Shown here: positions 18,101-28,714 of the stretch, piece by piece
Position numbering within the stretch: the first letter of the stretch is position 1
Layout of the letters: every line of letters starts with the position of its first letter
Assembly: GCA_001179505.1 (NCBI GenBank)
Contig: CDMY01000281.1
Location: forward strand, 72,784 to 136,579
From: Vitrella brassicaformis CCMP3155
Taxonomy: Eukaryota > Protista > Chromerida
DNA length: 63,796 nucleotides
Direction of reading: 5' to 3'
Notes under the pieces: generated by a model
Told to the model about the DNA's origin: nothing
The model's database searches: none
The model's input: only the letters and a program-made list of their open reading frames with translations
Translations under genes and position numbers: made by a program

Positions 18101-18743
18101 TGGGAGGTGATGTGTGGCCGTGTGTCGTGTGGCGTGTGTCGTGTGGTGTGTCTGCAGGCAGTGAGTCGCGCATAATGCTCGACGCCCATGTGCGGTCCGT
18201 CGTGGCCGTCGGTGAGACACACACACACACACAGACACACAGACACCCACGAGCTCACTGAACCGCCGGACTCCGACACTCAGGTGAGCCGTTCTCCGCT
18301 GAGGGGATGTTCGACTTTGCGAGCACCAACATCGTCAACAAGGCAAGCCTGTCTGTCCACACACCACACACATATTGGCTGTCTGGTCTATATCTCTGAT
18401 GTGCGTCTGTGCGTCCGTCCGTCCGTGTGTGTCCGTGTTTGTGTGTGTGTGTGCGTGTGTGTGTGCAGGTCTATGAGTTGAGTCCGGTGATGCTTGAGCA
18501 TCGGCAGAAGCCGCCGCCCCCCGAGGTCTACTCGCTGCACCGCAAGCTGGCCGGCTGCTACCTCCTCTGCATCAAACTCAAGGCACATGTGCCGGCCAAA
18601 GAGGTGCGGGCCCCTCACACACACACACACACACGCCGCCGCCCCCCGAGTCTCTCCATCCTTTGCTGGTGTGTGTGCAGATGTTTGACGATGTGTATGC
18701 CCGCTATGAGTTCAGCGGCCCAGACACGTACCAGGGGGTCTAG
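15193..18743 (+). CDS. COQ8: ABC1/COQ8 (ADCK3/4-like) atypical kinase, ubiquinone biosynthesis
   Basis: KMRGAALKLGQMLS (KxGQ), IAAASIGQVH, VAVKVQYPGV, MQTDPNPANF, LIDFGA, PPPEVYSLHRKLAGCYLLC. About 16 exons, stop TAG at 18741-18743. Confidence 0.95.
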
Positions 18744-23091: not shown

Positions 23092-24589
23092 CTAGAGTTT
23101 TCCCTTGAAGTGCCATGTGACCTGGGCGGTCCGAGAACCCGACACCCCGTACTTGAAGTTCCCGGAACGCGGCCCAGTGAATGTCTGGTTCAGGCGCCGG
23201 CCGGTGCCTGTCTCAACTTCAACGTCGAGCTGTCAGCATGCGAATCAGAAACAGACAGAAATGTTGGAGAAAACACAGGACAAATACCTGGCCGTTGGCA
23301 AAGCACATTGTCCTGGTCTTGCCATTCAATTTGTCCTTGAAGGAGTAGGTGTCTCCATCGCATGGCTTCTCCTGCTCCTCCTCAGACGAGCGGGGCTCCT
23401 TGATGCACTTGCCCGTGCCCACTGGTGGGAGCCAGTCGATATCCGAGGACACCTTGTCGGCATTCGGCCAGGACACCTTCTCGACAGCGCACACCTTGGG
23501 CGCCTCGCACCCCTTGGCGTAACTAGGGACCCACACAACATCCCACCTCGCGAGGTCTTTCTCTGACCAAATGAAATAGAGCAGTGGAGACAAGACTTTG
23601 TGGGGATGCCGATGAGCCCTCACTCAAGTCGGTCCACTTCTCCTCTTTCCCAGCCTTGAAGAACACCGAGCAGGATGAGAAGAACAATGAGTCCCAGAAT
23701 GGGCCTGTGCACATCGGACACAATGTCATGATGGCATTGCATCCAGTGCCACTCGCAGCTATGCCGCGCCTCGCCCACCGTCATGTGCCTGGAAGAACGC
23801 TGCAGCCGTGCCGCTCTGCGGCTGTCCAAGGTCTGCAATCAGAGCCATGAAGAACGTCATGGTGGGTGGGCTGAGCTCAAATCGAGTCGTACAAGTGTGC
23901 AGTGAGCTGACAACGAACCATTGCAGTCGGGCCCTTGCAGAGCGCATCCCTCTCCAGTGATCACGTCAGCAGCGGAGAGCCGAGCAAGGAGCAGGAACAC
24001 TACCCGACAAGGTGCGGCGAAAAGCTGGAGTTCCGGCCGGAAAGCTGAGAGGAGGCGGGGAAAGCTAGCTAGGCCCACAGAAGGCCAGCTAAGCCCGCGG
24101 AAAGCCAGCCAGCCACCCGGAAAGCTGGCCAGACCACCCAGAAAGCTGGCCTTCCGGGCCTCCCTGCCAGCTTTCCAGCCGGAAAGCTGGCCTGTCCAGC
24201 TTTCCAGCCGGAAAGCTGGCTTTGCCGACCTCCCTGCCAGCTTGCCAGCCGGACAGCTGGCTGTCCCGCCCTCCTGTGTGCTCAGAGGGCGGAAAGCTGG
24301 CCTTCTACACTGATGCGAAGGCCTCCACGGACAGCCCTGCGACTCTCTCCATGAATCATTGACTGTCAGTGAATGAATGCCATGCATTGGCTCCACCGGT
24401 CCCACACACTCACACACACACGCCGAACCCATCAATGAATGAACGAATGGATGGATGGACGGCACCAACACTCAACCACACTGATATCTCACTCACTCAA
24501 TCACTCACTCAATCACTTGCTGCCATCCACCCACCCATCCACCCTCCCACTCACGTGTGGTGCACTCTCTCTCACACACAGACCGAAGG

Positions 24590-24624
<35 letters not shown>

Positions 24625-25852
24625 GGGCAGCGCTATGTCCTCTGCAGGTTGTGACCGAGCGTTGCTTCACGCCCGTCATGAGGCAGTCACCCTTCAAGGA
24701 GGCCATCGCAGCAGGGCTGAAGGCCAGGCCGAAGCGCACCATCGAGCTGCTAGAGACCCACCTCTCCGGCCTCGTCGAAAACAACGCCAAAGAATGGAAA
24801 CAGTGCATGGAAGCGGTGAGTGTCCATGCAGAACAACACACCACGGCGGGCAGGACAGCTAACAACACGTCACCGATTGCTTTTGTCGTTGTGTGTTATA
24901 GGTGTATGTGTCGAGGTCCTGCACGGCTACCTCGATGACCGCGGCCTGCAGTCCTGTGGATTCTACAGCAACCCGCGTGCGTTCCAAAAGCCGCCGGTAG
25001 ACCCGCTGATTTCTTCTGCTGTCATCAGGCAAACCTGTGACACACGACACACAGAGAGACATCGTATCAGGATCGGTGAGAGTCAGTGAGAAGGAGACAC
25101 ACATCGGTTGCTGTGTGTCTCAGTGTCTCTGTATGTGAGTCGGGTGTGTACTGTCGTGTGTGTCGAATGCACACGGCGGGCGGGGCAATGGGCCGGCGGG
25201 CGGCACCATCATCACACCAGGACCTAAGGGAGACACACACACACACGAGCCCAGTGGAGACAGCAGCATGACTCCCTCTCGACTCAATCGCTAGTGAGTG
25301 AGTGAGCGAGTGATTGAGTGAGTGAGATATCAGTGTGGTTGAGTGTTGGTGCCGTCCATCCATCCATTCGTTCATTCATTGATGGGTTCGGCGTGTGTGT
25401 GTGAGTGTGTGGGACCGGTGAAGCCAATGCATGGCATTCATTCACTGACAGTCAATGATTCATGGAGAGAGTCGCAGGGCTGTCCGTGGAGGCCTTCGCA
25501 TCAGTGTAGAAGGCCAGCTTTCCGCCCTCTGAGCACACAGGAGGGCGGGACAGCCAGCTGTCCGGCTGGCAAGCTGGCAGGGAGGTCGGGAAAGCCAGCT
25601 TTCCAGCCGGAAAGCTGGCAGGGAGGCCCGGAAGGCCAGCTTTCCGGGTGGTCTGGCCAGCTTTCCGGGTGGCTGGCTGGCTTTCCGCGGGCTTAGCTAG
25701 CCTTCTGTGGGCCTAGCTAGCTTTCCCCGCCTCCTCTCAGCTTTCCGGCCGGAACTCCAGCTTTTCGCCGCACCTTGTCGGGTAGTGAAGAAGAGACCGA
25801 GACACCAGCGGGCACCATCTTTCTCGTCTTGCAACTTCTGCCACACGATCAT
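23092..25852 (-). CDS. Orphan secreted/membrane protein whose first coding exon is interrupted by the CACTA element
   Basis: Removing 23998-25787 and one AA copy restores ..WCLGLFFLLLARLSAADVITGEGCALQGPDCN. Four further exons (DLGQPQ.., GPFWDS.., KDLARWD.., LDVEVE..WHFKGKL*) join in frame via GT-AG introns. Confidence 0.75.
23998..24510 (+). repeat. Left inverted arm of the CACTA element
   Basis: Near-identical reverse complement of 25300-25787, differing by a few substitutions and one internal duplication of about 27 bp. Confidence 0.9.
24000..25773 (-). other. Predicted transposon-derived spliceosomal intron (1,774 nt)
   Basis: Minus-strand donor CAAG|GTGCGG at 25774/25773 and acceptor CTTTTCGCCGCACCTTGTCGGGTAG|TG at 24000/23999. 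The join keeps the host frame (FF-TTRQVF-LLL). Splicing itself is not demonstrated. Confidence 0.55.
24648..24996 (+). pseudogene. Two-exon gene fragment inside the element (cargo or transposase remnant)
   Basis: Phase-0 exons 24648-24815 (VVTERCF..WKQCMEA) and 24916-24996 (VLHGYLDD..FQKPP) with cag|..|gtgagt and gag|..|gtag boundaries. No start or stop codon. Confidence 0.55.
25300..25787 (-). repeat. Right inverted arm of the CACTA element
   Basis: Reverse complement of 23998-24510, read directly. Confidence 0.9.
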
Positions 25853-25898
25853 CTGAAAGGTTTTACGCACAGAAGCCCACATCTTACCTAACACCGCA

Positions 25899-28714
25899 AT
25901 GCTTGTCCCGAAGCGTGTGCTGACAACCGAATCGCAATCGACGACTGCAGTGAGCACGGAAGCAACGGAGGCAAGAGAGGCGGTGGAGTATGACGAGGCG
26001 TATCGTGATCCCGAGGCGAGAGCAGGAGGGCAGCTGCAAGATGGCTATGCAGGAAGCGACGACACAGATGATGGGTGAGGCCGCTGCATGACCGGTGTCA
26101 GCTGCTTTTCTTAATTGGCAATGCTCCATCCGTGCCGTTGTGTGAGTTATGCAGCATGGCGCCGTCTGTGATAGGGCGTGGTAGTGCGTCGTCGCTCGAA
26201 GATCTGAAGGATCATGGTGGCGGCACGCCACACGCATCGCTCGCTGACGTGACGCCGCCATGCACGCCGCTGCTCGGCCTCTCAGTGGCATTCGCCGCTG
26301 TCACAGGTAAGCATCACCTGCACCTGATCGTGGTGCTGACTGACCGATGTGCCTCCTGTGTGGCATTCACTTCCTGATTCCTTCAGGGATTTTGATGGGT
26401 TACGATTTCGCCATAGCAGCAGTGGTGCTGCAGCCGATCCAAGAGGACTTCAACTTGTGCAGCGGCCAGTTCACCTGCCGGGCAAAGGACCTGTTTGTGT
26501 CGCTCGTCGGGCCGGGGGCGATCGTCGGCGCCATGTCGGGCGGCAGCATCGCAGATTGGTTCGGCCGCCGTGTGGCCCTCGCCGCAAGTGACTTTTTCAT
26601 CATATTGGCCGCCTCCCTCATGGCTTTAGGTACCTGCATCCAACACGTGTGGCGTGTCGCCCATTGCCCATGTGGTGTGTCTGTCGGTGTGTTGTGCAGG
26701 TCAATCGTTTTTTGTGGTGTTGATTGGTCGGTTCTTTGTGGGCATGGGGGCGGGCATCGGGCTGGTCAACTTCTCCACATACACGTCGGAGATATCGCCG
26801 CCCAAACGAAGAGGTGCACTCGTCGTCTGCCAGGTGCGACGCGACGCGCCGAGGAATGAGACCACATCTCGTCTGTACGTCTCTCTATCGATCCATTTTG
26901 TCTTGTCTGTGTGTCAGGAGTTGTGTCAGTGAGTCTACGCTCACCCTGGCGTAGATCTCCGCTATGTACTGCGTGCATTGGCATTGTTATGTCTGTGTCA
27001 GATGCATCGGTGCCATTCTTGCTTTCCTGGCTGCCGTCAGTTTGGGGCCCTCCACCGAGCATGCAACCGAGAATGCGTGGCGGTGGCTGCTGGGTGCTGC
27101 AGGGCTGGTGGGCGTCGTGCAGGGGTTCGGTATCCTCCTGCTACCTGAAAGCCCCAGATGGTACGCGTGTGCGCTGGTGGGTGTGGACCCGCCATTCATC
27201 TTGTCTCTCTGTGTTGTCTCAGGCTGATGTTTCGGTATCGCGAGGAACGAGCCAGGGAGGTGATGCGGAAGCTGGGAATGGGGAGCACAGCCGACATCGA
27301 CCAACAGGTACTCCGCGCCCCAGCACCCACTTGGCATTGCCAAACAAACACACACACACACGCGACCTTTTCTTCTCTGCATTCCATCAGATGGCTGCCA
27401 TCCGCCGCGAGCGTGACGGCGACAAATTCCTCGACGCGCGTACGGTCAGCTCCAATGGTTCGGATGAGTCGCTCTGCACTGCCGAGGACGAAACCGCCCA
27501 CTCCCGGAAGAAGCGGGCGCCCCTGCGCGCCGACGAGGAGGGCGGCTGGGTGAAGAGGGTGGCGCTGCAATGGAGAGAGATTCGGGGGCACCGGAAGCAG
27601 ATGCTCATGGCCGTCGGCTGTGCTGTGGCGGGGGTGAGGCGCACACATACGGGGCGGCTGACGGATGAATGACGTCCGCCTGTGTGTGCGCGTGACGTTC
27701 AGAACCTGACATTCGGTCCTGTGGTGTTTCCGTTGAGTGAGGACATTTTGCGGCTTGCTGGTGTGGGGCCGCTGGGGCGGTTTTGGGCTGGCCTCGGGAT
27801 AGGGCTCATGAAGGTGAGATGCGTGTACACTCACTCGACTCGCGCCAGTACCCCCAGGCCCAGAGACAACCACTCTGCAGTGCACAGTGAGTGTGTGTCG
27901 TCGTCTCTTGATTCGTTCAGCTGTTCGGTGTCCTGCTGACGATGAGCACTGTAGATGTGTTTGGCCGACGTCGGCTGCTGTTTGTGGGCAATCTGGGTAC
28001 GTGCTGCTGCCATCTGTTGCTCTCGGTGGCCTTCCTGTCTCACGTCCTCTATACGGGCCACTCCATCGACCTCAACGCCTCCTACACCCATGACCAGCCC
28101 GCGGAGCTATTGCCGCCCTCCCTGACGGCTGTGTTGGGGAGCCTGGGGGTGCTGCTGTTCATGCTGGCGTGGAATGTGGGCTGGGCCAGCATGATCTATG
28201 TGGTGGCGAGTGAGCTGCTGCCCAGCCGCATTAGGGGCGTCGGCATGAGCATGGTCGAGGTCACCTTCTGGGTGCTGGCCTTTGTCAACGGCAACACCAT
28301 GGAACGGCTTTTCCTCAACATCACGCCACAAGGCAAGTTGGTCGACACACGCGAGTCGAGTCGTGCGCATCTATCTATCTATGTCTGTCTGTCTGTGTGC
28401 CTTCAGGGACGTTCCTGCTGTATGCGTGTTTGAACGCATTATGTTTTGTGCTGATATGCGTGCTGCCGGAGAACACTGGCAAGTCACTCGAAGACATCAA
28501 CGCGGCCCTCTCGCCACACACACGACATCATACAGCAGGAAGCAATGACGGCGATGGCGTCAAGATGGCCTGGCCCGCACCGGCCGACCAGCACAACGGC
28601 GGCGCTGTTGAGATGGCCCAGAAGGTCGGTCCTGTGTGTGTGGGCAAGAAGGTGCTGCACAAACAGTCCCGTGTGCTCCAATACGACATGATGGACGATG
28701 AGACCAGCGACTGA
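25899..28714 (+). CDS. MFS sugar porter family transporter
   Basis: GILMGYDFA, ADWFGRR, GRFFVGMG, YTSEISPPKRRG, WRWLLG, LPESPRW, VDVFGRRRLL, SELLPSRIRG, LPENTGKSLEDI. The start may instead be at 26156. Confidence 0.93.

What the first reader, a model, noticed from the sequence alone, without database searches (positions are those of the whole stretch)
23998..25787. CACTA transposon whose TIR encodes both splice sites, so it would splice out in frame (introner-like)
The TIR CACTACCCGACAAG|GTGCGG gives a donor 14 nt inside one end. Its complement at the other end, ..CTTTTCGCCGCACCTTGTCGGGTAG|TG, gives a pyrimidine-rich acceptor 2 nt from the end. The retained 14+2 nt plus the 2-nt TSD total 18 nt, so the host reads GLFF-TTRQVF-LLLA with no frameshift or stop. 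The unspliced insertion (1,792 nt) is not a multiple of 3. Because the TIRs are symmetric, this works in either orientation. GTGCGG is used as a donor elsewhere in this window (COQ8, ~18605). Maize dSpm elements are known to be spliced via terminal sites. Here the donor offset matches a 2-bp TSD exactly, which suggests a family that hides in exons and creates new introns.
Basis: partly seen in the sequence, partly recalled or inferred. Interest (0 to 1): 0.9.

Follow-up and report, generated by a model that had tools for sequence, protein, structure and literature searches.

The report
Young CACTA-type transposon interrupting an algal gene
A recently inserted 1.8-kb cut-and-paste transposon sits at the start of a small gene of the alga Vitrella brassicaformis; its ends do contain sequences that could act as splice sites, but the RNA data I could reach show no sign that it is spliced out, so it looks like an ordinary insertion, not a proven intron-maker.

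Summary
Window 23998-25787 is a 1,790-bp element with exact CACTACCCGACAAGGTGCGG ends, about 520-bp inverted arms, subterminal repeats and an AA/AA 2-bp duplication. The genome is Vitrella brassicaformis CCMP3155.

The element lies between a divergent MFS transporter gene and a small orphan gene (CEL99482.1). It most likely interrupts the orphan's first coding exon, in a signal-peptide-like segment. Removing the element plus one duplication copy gives an open frame from an ATG through three RNA-supported splice junctions.

Use of these sites is not shown, and the evidence leans against it:
- No RNA contig joins 25774 to 23999.
- No RNA covers the upstream exon remnant.
- Host RNA contigs stop 49 nt short of the element.
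- The intron would be 1,774 nt against 61-86 nt for local introns, and would end in TAG where 7 of 7 local introns end in CAG.
- Both sites sit inside a perfect hairpin stem.
- Six of 12 GT/AG pairs near the ends are also frame-preserving.
- Depth suggests only 2-3 copies of the family.

Termini-encoded splicing of CACTA elements (maize dSpm) and introners that add codons are already known. Other first readers of this scan noted the same stretch, and similar elements elsewhere in this genome.

The parts
23996..23997 (.). Left copy of the 2-bp target-site duplication (AA; TT on the host strand)
   Evidence: Removing the element plus one copy restores an open frame.
23998..24520 (.). Left terminal inverted repeat arm (about 520 nt), starting CACTACCCGACAAGGTGCGG, with subterminal GGAAAGCTGGC-type repeats at about 24097-24304
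24521..25294 (.). Central non-palindromic region carrying gene-fragment cargo: a coding-like exon, a GT..AG intron and a second exon on the + strand at about 24648-24998, and a 73-nt exon copy at 25152-25224
   Evidence: Translations. RNA contigs from elsewhere match 25152-25224 with one mismatch and unrelated flanks. DNA depth over 24633-25168 is at single-copy level.
25295..25787 (.). Right terminal inverted repeat arm, ending ...CCGCACCTTGTCGGGTAGTG, with subterminal repeats at about 25510-25690
25788..25789 (.). Right copy of the 2-bp target-site duplication (AA)
25768..25779 (-). Putative donor on the host strand: ACAAG|GTGCGG, cut between 25774 and 25773. A candidate site only.
   Evidence: Sequence. 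No RNA joint was seen. It is paired in the predicted hairpin.
23998..24025 (-). Putative acceptor on the host strand: CTTTTCGCCGCACCTTGTCGGGTAG|TG, cut between 24000 and 23999. A candidate site only.
   Evidence: Sequence. No RNA joint was seen. It is paired in the predicted hairpin.
23919..23997 (-). Downstream part of host exon 1 (frame ..LLLARLSAADVITGEGCALQGPDCN), ending at the RNA-supported donor at 23919
   Evidence: The joint 23919|23832 is in RNA run X2, and that contig reaches about 23948.
25788..25882 (-). Inferred upstream remnant of host exon 1 (MWASVRKTFQMIVWQKLQDEKDGARWCLGLFF, ATG at 25882-25880). Not covered by RNA contigs.
   Evidence: The ORF is. X2 has zero depth on this remnant, and the X1 contig in that bin starts only at 25894.
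23092..23947 (-). Annotated CDS range of the host gene CEL99482.1 (200 aa, orphan). Its ATG at 23947 and its first donor are in a different frame from the RNA-supported junction.
   Evidence: The RNA-supported introns are 23563-23623, 23705-23778 and 23833-23918.
25894..26073 (+). First RNA-supported exon of the divergent MFS sugar-transporter gene (annotated ATG at 25899), 107 nt from the right end of the element
   Evidence: A 3,336-nt X1 RNA contig carries GT..AG joints. Annotation and Pfam Sugar_tr/MFS_1 are.

Best explanation
This is a young, low-copy, non-autonomous cut-and-paste transposon of the CACTA/CMC kind. It is fold-back-like, with about 520-bp inverted arms that carry subterminal repeats. 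It is also Pack-like, with captured intron-containing gene fragments in the middle. It inserted with a 2-bp duplication into what was a 159-bp head-to-head gap (annotated ATG to annotated ATG) between an MFS transporter gene and a small orphan gene of Vitrella brassicaformis. The insertion most probably (about 70%) lies in the orphan gene's first coding exon, splitting a signal-peptide-like hydrophobic segment (..WCLGLFF|LLLARLSAA..). Otherwise it lies in that gene's 5' leader or promoter. I read it as an ordinary, tolerated insertion in a weakly expressed, lineage-specific gene. The downstream exons are still transcribed and spliced at low level, probably from a start near or inside the left end of the element. 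The GT and AG in the terminal repeats are potential cryptic splice sites of a kind long known for CACTA ends, not a demonstrated intron-making adaptation. Shown here: the element's anatomy, its presence in independent DNA runs, the host's downstream splice junctions, and the frame arithmetic. Inferred: the original start codon and signal peptide, the present transcription start, and the lack of splicing.
For: Element anatomy and the improbability of chance come. DNA contigs of run X3 cross both junctions by 30 nt. Organism and contig are given. The RNA-supported junction 23919|23832 turns the annotated ATG frame into a 9-codon ORF, and the frame that runs through all three junctions has no ATG between 23997 and 23919. 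Dropping the element plus one TT gives an open frame from ATG 25882 to the stop at 23219, with a continuous hydrophobic stretch across the join. No 25774->23999 joint is listed, and no RNA depth falls on the outer arms (bins 23970-24303 and 25306-25806) or on 25788-25893. The host contig ends at about 23948 while still at about 5x depth. Local introns are 61-86 nt and all end in CAG. The hairpin has a predicted energy of -1460 kcal/mol, with donor and acceptor paired to each other. Six of 12 alternative site pairs are also in frame. The terminal 81-nt contig has depth 136.8 against 21-26 for the flanks, which is roughly 5 arms or 2-3 elements. No protein among 5.8 billion carries the upstream exon peptide or arm-encoded ORFs. 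The host protein is an orphan. Vitrella is very compact: exons are about half the genome and the median intergenic gap is 92 bp, so a random insertion often hits a gene (PMC4501334 supplement).
Against: RNA evidence comes only from assembled contigs of two small transcriptome runs with about 5x depth on this gene, and these drop rare forms, so absence of the joint is weak evidence. The host's downstream exons are still expressed and correctly spliced, which needs some explanation of where transcription starts. AAG|GTGCGG is a credible donor in this genome. CACTA ends have been shown in maize to work as splice sites. Other first readers flagged at least two more TIR elements in this genome with similar 'built-in splice sites', which could point to a pattern. 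The putative host start codon lies only 16 nt from the MFS start codon on the other strand, which is unusually tight and weakens the exon-insertion reading.
Confidence: 0.68

Rival explanations
1. Introner-like behaviour. The host gene is transcribed from its original promoter through the element. The spliceosome removes 1,774 nt using the donor 14 nt inside one terminal repeat and the TAG|TG acceptor 2 nt inside the other. This leaves 18 extra nt (six codons, TTRQVF) in the signal-peptide region, so the gene stays functional.
For: The sites exist and the arithmetic is right. The retained 16 nt have no stop in any frame, and the arms are symmetric, so the same would hold in either orientation. 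GTGCGG fits as a donor elsewhere in the window. Downstream host exons are expressed. Precedents exist: maize dSpm termini act as splice sites (Menssen et al. 1990, cited in PMC4219821), and an Aureococcus introner carries both sites and adds 12 nt (PMC9860276).
Against: No such joint is seen, and there is no RNA on 25788-25893 in either RNA run. The intron would be about 20 times the local intron length and would end in TAG, against 7 of 7 CAG locally. Donor and acceptor pair with each other in an 88-bp perfect stem within a hairpin of about 520 bp. The six inserted residues put R, Q and two T into the hydrophobic core. Frame preservation is not special. There are very few copies. The annotation, built with RNA-seq intron hints (PMC4501334), does not use the sites.
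Confidence: 0.14
2. The public annotation is right: the host CDS starts at ATG 23947, and the element lies 50 nt upstream in the shared promoter/5'-leader region of two divergent genes. No coding sequence is interrupted, the open frame across the empty site is a coincidence, and no splicing is needed.
For: The annotated CDS ranges leave 23948-25898 between genes, which would be 159 bp without the insertion and near the genome's norm (PMC4501334). The putative upstream start codon would lie only 16 nt from the MFS ATG. An open 32-codon stretch in GC-rich DNA is not rare. RNA contigs of the host end just upstream of ATG 23947.
Against: The only RNA-supported first donor (23919) closes the annotated frame after 9 codons. 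The annotated donor (CTT|GTACGA) has no RNA support here. The hydrophobic run WCLGLFF abuts LLLARLSAA exactly at the join and in the right frame.
Confidence: 0.18

Closest known systems
Maize En/Spm (CACTA) defective elements spliced through sites in their termini (a2-m1 dSpm; Menssen et al. 1990 EMBO J 9:3051, cited in PMC4219821)
   Same: Both have CACTA...TAGTG ends and subterminal repeats and are non-autonomous elements in an exon. The acceptor candidate TAG|TG is the inverted CACTA end itself, and a donor lies in the other terminus. Removal would leave a few element-derived nucleotides and a slightly altered protein.
   Different: In maize the splicing was shown by cDNA; here it is only a sequence possibility. 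This element has about 520-bp arms, a 2-bp duplication instead of 3 bp, and sits in a genome whose introns are about 60-90 nt. I could not read the 1990 paper itself, so details of the maize sites rest on its title and my own knowledge.
Introners: intron-generating transposons (Gozashti et al. 2022, PMC9860276; Gozashti et al. 2025, PMC12130899; Amoebophrya introner elements, PMC7789003)
   Same: These are TIR plus TSD elements that carry or co-opt splice sites. The Aureococcus family carries both sites and adds 12 nt (4 from the element, 8 from the TSD), which is the same logic as 14+2+2 here. Alveolate relatives (Symbiodinium, Amoebophrya) have them.
   Different: Introners are defined by many near-identical copies found as spliced introns, from 5 to more than 2,000 copies per genome, with family median lengths of 30-654 nt. 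Here there are about 2-3 copies by depth, a 1,774-nt would-be intron, no spliced RNA and no annotated intron. No paper in the library links introners to Vitrella or Chromera.
CMC (Chapaev-Mirage-CACTA) elements with 2-bp duplications, e.g. ENS1_Cis and the CMC-NA MITEs (PMC6004678)
   Same: They share CAC...GTG termini and a 2-bp TSD and are non-autonomous derivatives.
   Different: Those are short MITEs. This one is 1.8 kb with very long arms and captured gene fragments, and its transposase partner was not identified here.
Pack-type gene-fragment-carrying DNA transposons and fold-back elements (from my own knowledge)
   Same: Long inverted arms make up 58% of the element, and the central part holds intron-containing pieces of host genes.
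   Different: The parent genes of the cargo were not identified here.

Membership tests
CACTA / CMC superfamily DNA transposon | Termini 5'-CACTA...TAGTG-3' in inverted orientation | tested here: met
   An exact 20-nt inverted end occurs twice against 0 expected by chance. The outer 88 bp are identical.
CACTA / CMC superfamily DNA transposon | Short target-site duplication (3 bp in EnSpm proper; 2 bp in some CMC lineages) | tested here: met
   The duplication is AA/AA, 2 bp. A 2-bp length is supported by frame restoration. The 3-bp EnSpm rule is not met, but 2-bp CMC elements are on record (PMC6004678). There is only one copy, so the length rests on one site.
CACTA / CMC superfamily DNA transposon | Arrays of subterminal repeats in both arms (transposase-binding motifs in En/Spm) | tested here: met
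   CCGGAAAGCTGGC with up to 1 mismatch gives 14 matches, 13 of them inside the arms, against 0.1 expected. Binding was not tested.
CACTA / CMC superfamily DNA transposon | An autonomous partner with a CMC-type DDE transposase and matching ends | not tested
   No transposase ORF lies in the element. Other notes of this scan report CMC-type transposases in the same genome, but I could not reach those loci.
Introner (intron-generating transposon) | Removed precisely from mRNA by the spliceosome | tested here: inconclusive
   No 25774->23999 joint appears in two RNA contig sets, and there is no RNA on the upstream exon remnant. Depth is low and contigs drop rare forms.
Introner (intron-generating transposon) | Many similar copies present as introns of unrelated genes | tested here: not met
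   There is one copy in 63.8 kb. The terminal 81 nt have about 5 times single-copy depth, which is 2-3 elements (rough). No copies turned up in metagenome contigs. The genome-wide context of the other copies could not be examined.
Introner (intron-generating transposon) | Carries or co-opts GT/AG so that the mRNA length change is 0 or a multiple of 3 | tested here: met
   14+2+2 = 18 nt with no stop. However, 6 of 12 nearby GT/AG pairs do the same.
Introner (intron-generating transposon) | Size in the range of the host's normal introns (family medians 30-654 nt in PMC9860276) | tested here: not met
   The would-be intron is 1,774 nt, against 61-86 nt for seven RNA-supported local introns.
Pack-type / gene-fragment-carrying transposon | Internal segments copied from host genes | tested here: inconclusive
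   RNA contigs from another locus match 25152-25224 with 1 mismatch and different flanks, and DNA depth there is about 2x. Exon-intron-exon-like ORFs lie at 24648-24998. The parent genes were not identified.

The most novel reading that the evidence does not exclude
A CMC/CACTA element of a chromerid alga is an incipient introner. Its terminal repeat pairs a donor at +14 with the universal CACTA TAG|TG acceptor, so that, with a 2-bp duplication, insertion in either orientation into a coding exon is removed in frame, leaving six codons. If so, even 1.8-kb, hairpin-forming, cargo-carrying copies would survive in exons of a genome that is half coding sequence. It would also be the first transposon-to-intron route seen in the closest photosynthetic relatives of apicomplexan parasites.
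Probability: 0.12. Interest if true: 0.6.

Novelty: new member of a known kind. Interest (0 to 1): 0.27.

Why it matters
If the ends were really used as splice sites, this would extend the transposon-to-intron route to chromerids. It would also show that a large fold-back element can be tolerated in an exon of a very compact genome. As it stands, the value is more modest. It is a cleanly delimited, young CACTA/CMC-type element with a 2-bp duplication and gene-fragment cargo, in a genome reported to hold only 0.17 Mb of class II elements. It also corrects the likely 5' end of gene CEL99482.1. And it is a well-defined test case, one specific junction, for anyone with the strand-specific Vitrella RNA-seq.

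Tried and rejected
1. Direct RNA test. The single read-laying run used two RNA and two DNA-like runs. It found the neighbouring introns but no joint across the element, and no further calls were available.

2. Looking for a transcript-derived or annotated protein that carries the spliced, empty-site or read-through N-terminus:
- The representative search with the last exon found only the annotated orphan protein plus weak repeat-inflated hits to bacterial surface proteins.
- The word-index searches with P0001, with the read-through ORF 25700-25957 and with an arm ORF found nothing new.
- The 90% cluster has one member.

3. Other copies of the family. The 20-nt end scanned in metagenome contigs gave two hits, which on inspection are chance matches in unrelated bacterial-looking DNA. 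There are no further copies in the window. The other Vitrella contigs could not be reached with these tools.

4. Pfam gave nothing for the host protein.

5. The Menssen 1990 paper is not held.

6. Rejected ideas:
- An assembly artefact: the X3 DNA contigs cross both junctions.
- A 3-bp duplication: GAA and AAG do not match.
- Frame preservation as evidence of design: 6 of 12 alternative pairs also preserve the frame.
Full report
**What is there**

Window 23998-25787 is a 1,790-bp element. Its 20-nt ends, CACTACCCGACAAGGTGCGG, are exact inverted copies and occur nowhere else in the window; 0 matches are expected by chance.

They span about 520 nt each, with 488 matches, 8 mismatches and one 29-nt indel, and the outer 88 bp are identical. 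Each arm carries an array of GGAAAGCTGGC-type subterminal repeats: 13 of 14 window matches lie in the arms, against 0.1 expected.

The flanks are AA|CACTA...TAGTG|AA, a 2-bp duplication.

The middle 770 nt is not palindromic. It contains coding-like pieces with a GT..AG intron on the + strand. It also holds a 73-nt segment (25152-25224) that RNA contigs from another locus match with one mismatch and different flanks. The element therefore carries captured gene fragments.

DNA contigs of run X3 run 30 nt into the element from both flanks, so the insertion is real and not an assembly artefact.

**Where it is**

The annotated protein recovered with the host's last exon is CEL99482.1 of Vitrella brassicaformis CCMP3155, on contig CDMY01000281.1.

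Mapping the annotated gene ranges onto the window gives two neighbours:
- an MFS sugar transporter CDS at 25899-28714 (+)
- the host CDS at 23092-23947 (-)

The annotated gap between the two start codons is 1,951 nt, and it would be 159 nt without the insertion. Vitrella is very compact. The median intergenic distance is 92 bp, exons total 35.8 Mb of 72.7 Mb, and class II elements total 0.17 Mb (PMC4501334 and its supplement).

**RNA evidence**

- Run X1 has a 3,336-nt contig of the MFS mRNA. It starts at 25894 and has GT..AG introns.
- Run X2 shows three minus-strand introns of the host: 23563-23623, 23705-23778 and 23833-23918.
- The host contig reaches about 23948, 49 nt short of the element, while still at about 5x depth.
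- Neither RNA run has depth on the element's outer arms (bins 23970-24303 and 25306-25806) or on 25788-25893.
- No joint from 25774 to 23999, or any other joint across the element, is listed.
- Contigs drop rare forms, so this weakens the splicing idea without excluding it.

**Is coding sequence interrupted?**

The RNA-supported first donor (23919) differs from the annotated one. With the RNA-supported donor, the annotated ATG (23947) runs into TGA after nine codons. The frame that continues through all three junctions (..LLLARLSAADVITGEGCALQGPDCN|DLGQPQ..) has no ATG between the element and 23919.

Removing the element and one TT gives an open frame from ATG 25882 to the stop at 23219. In it, WCLGLFF abuts LLLARLSAA to form a signal-peptide-like hydrophobic run.

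I put about 70% on the insertion being in the first coding exon. The counter-argument is that this start codon would lie 16 nt from the MFS start codon on the other strand. Also, an open 32-codon stretch in GC-rich DNA is not rare.

The host protein is an orphan. Only weak, repeat-inflated hits to bacterial surface-repeat proteins were found, and there is no Pfam match.

**The splice-site idea**

The arithmetic is correct. The donor AAG|GTGCGG lies 14 nt inside one end, and the acceptor ..GTCGGGTAG|TG lies 2 nt inside the other. That makes 14+2+2 = 18 nt and reads GLFF-TTRQVF-LLLA. The unspliced reading stops after 61 codons. GTGCGG also fits as the donor of the last ABC1/COQ8 intron.

Several things count against use of these sites:
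- **Intron length and acceptor.** The seven RNA-supported local introns are 61-86 nt and all end in CAG. The proposed intron is 1,774 nt and ends in TAG after a poor pyrimidine tract.
- **Secondary structure.** The element's RNA folds into one hairpin of -1460 kcal/mol, in which the donor GU and the acceptor AG are paired with each other's arm.
- **Frame preservation is not special.** Of 12 GT/AG pairs within 120 nt of the ends, 6 are in frame without a stop. One of these uses a better-looking acceptor, CCTCCTCTCAG. The TAG|TG acceptor is simply the inverted CACTA end, common to all such elements.
- **Copy number.** The contig of the terminal 81 nt has depth 136.8, against 21-26 for the single-copy flanks. 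That is roughly five arms, or 2-3 elements (a rough estimate, as the tool warns). A family that makes introns on a genomic scale would have far more.
- **No protein trace.** No protein in the 5.8-billion collection carries the upstream exon peptide or arm-derived ORFs. The annotation, made with RNA-seq intron hints, does not use the sites.

**Comparison with what is known**

Splice sites in the termini of a CACTA element that turn a defective copy into a new intron were described for maize dSpm in the A2 gene. I know this from Menssen et al. 1990, cited in PMC4219821; the paper itself is not held.

Introners that carry both splice sites and add a multiple of three nucleotides, counting element plus duplication, are described for Aureococcus. 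TIR/TSD introners are known in the alveolates Symbiodinium and Amoebophrya (PMC9860276; PMC7789003).

CMC elements with 2-bp duplications are on record (PMC6004678). No paper in the library links introners to Vitrella or Chromera.

**Earlier notes of this scan**

Other first readers noted the same stretch as a CACTA element with a 2-bp duplication, frame restoration and Pack-like cargo. They also noted further CACTA fold-back copies, and a different TIR element in a BTB exon. For that last case a follow-up agent likewise found no evidence of splicing. These notes gave me leads only. I confirmed the organism myself.

**Verdict**

My estimates are:
- **About 0.68:** an ordinary young insertion of a low-copy CACTA/CMC fold-back element at the 5' end of an orphan gene, with unused or at most cryptic splice potential. 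Within this reading I put about 70% on the insertion being inside the first coding exon.
- **About 0.14:**
- **About 0.18:** the annotation is right, the element is purely in the promoter or leader, and the open frame is a coincidence.

One RNA-seq mapping would settle it.

Noticed in passing
window 26835-27001 (microexon at about 26919-26928): The MFS transporter mRNA contains a microexon of about 10 nt (AGTTGTGTCA) between two short introns. It is seen in both RNA runs as 10 letters lying between the sides of a 167-nt skip.
   Followed up: partly
window 23092-23997, minus strand: The public model of CEL99482.1 starts at ATG 23947 and uses a first donor near 23894. The RNA contig uses donor 23919, which closes that frame after 9 codons. 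The model's 3' end (a last intron near 23245-23284) also differs from the simple ORF that ends at 23219. The annotated N-terminus is probably a work-around for the transposon insertion.
   Followed up: partly
window 24633-25244: The cargo of the element is heterogeneous. DNA depth over 24633-25168 is single-copy, so that part is unique to this copy. Over 25139-25244 it is about 2x, and an expressed exon from elsewhere matches with one C>T difference at 25174. Variant positions 25133 and 25138 indicate a second, slightly different copy in the genome.
   Followed up: partly
window 24304-24470: RNA run X2 has depth 33 on this inner part of the left arm, far above the host gene's depth of about 5, but none on the outer arm. 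Either another family copy or a gene that shares this segment is transcribed.
   Followed up: no
window 25807-25987 and 23958-23997: DNA-like run X5, which carries a different organism label, shows zero depth in the bin 25807-25973. Its contigs stop at 23957 and restart at 25988, whereas run X3 is continuous up to both junctions. This could be a coverage hole, a filter effect, or a structural difference next to the element.
   Followed up: no
window 23100-23997: Three marine-sediment metagenome runs from 2025 hold 19-36% of the sampled words of this flank at near identity. Vitrella or a very close relative is therefore present in those sediments and might supply an empty-site allele.
   Followed up: no
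window 18604-18680: The last intron of the ABC1/COQ8-like gene fits a GTGCGG donor and a CAG acceptor (77 nt). The frame continues to the annotated stop at 18743.
   Followed up: partly
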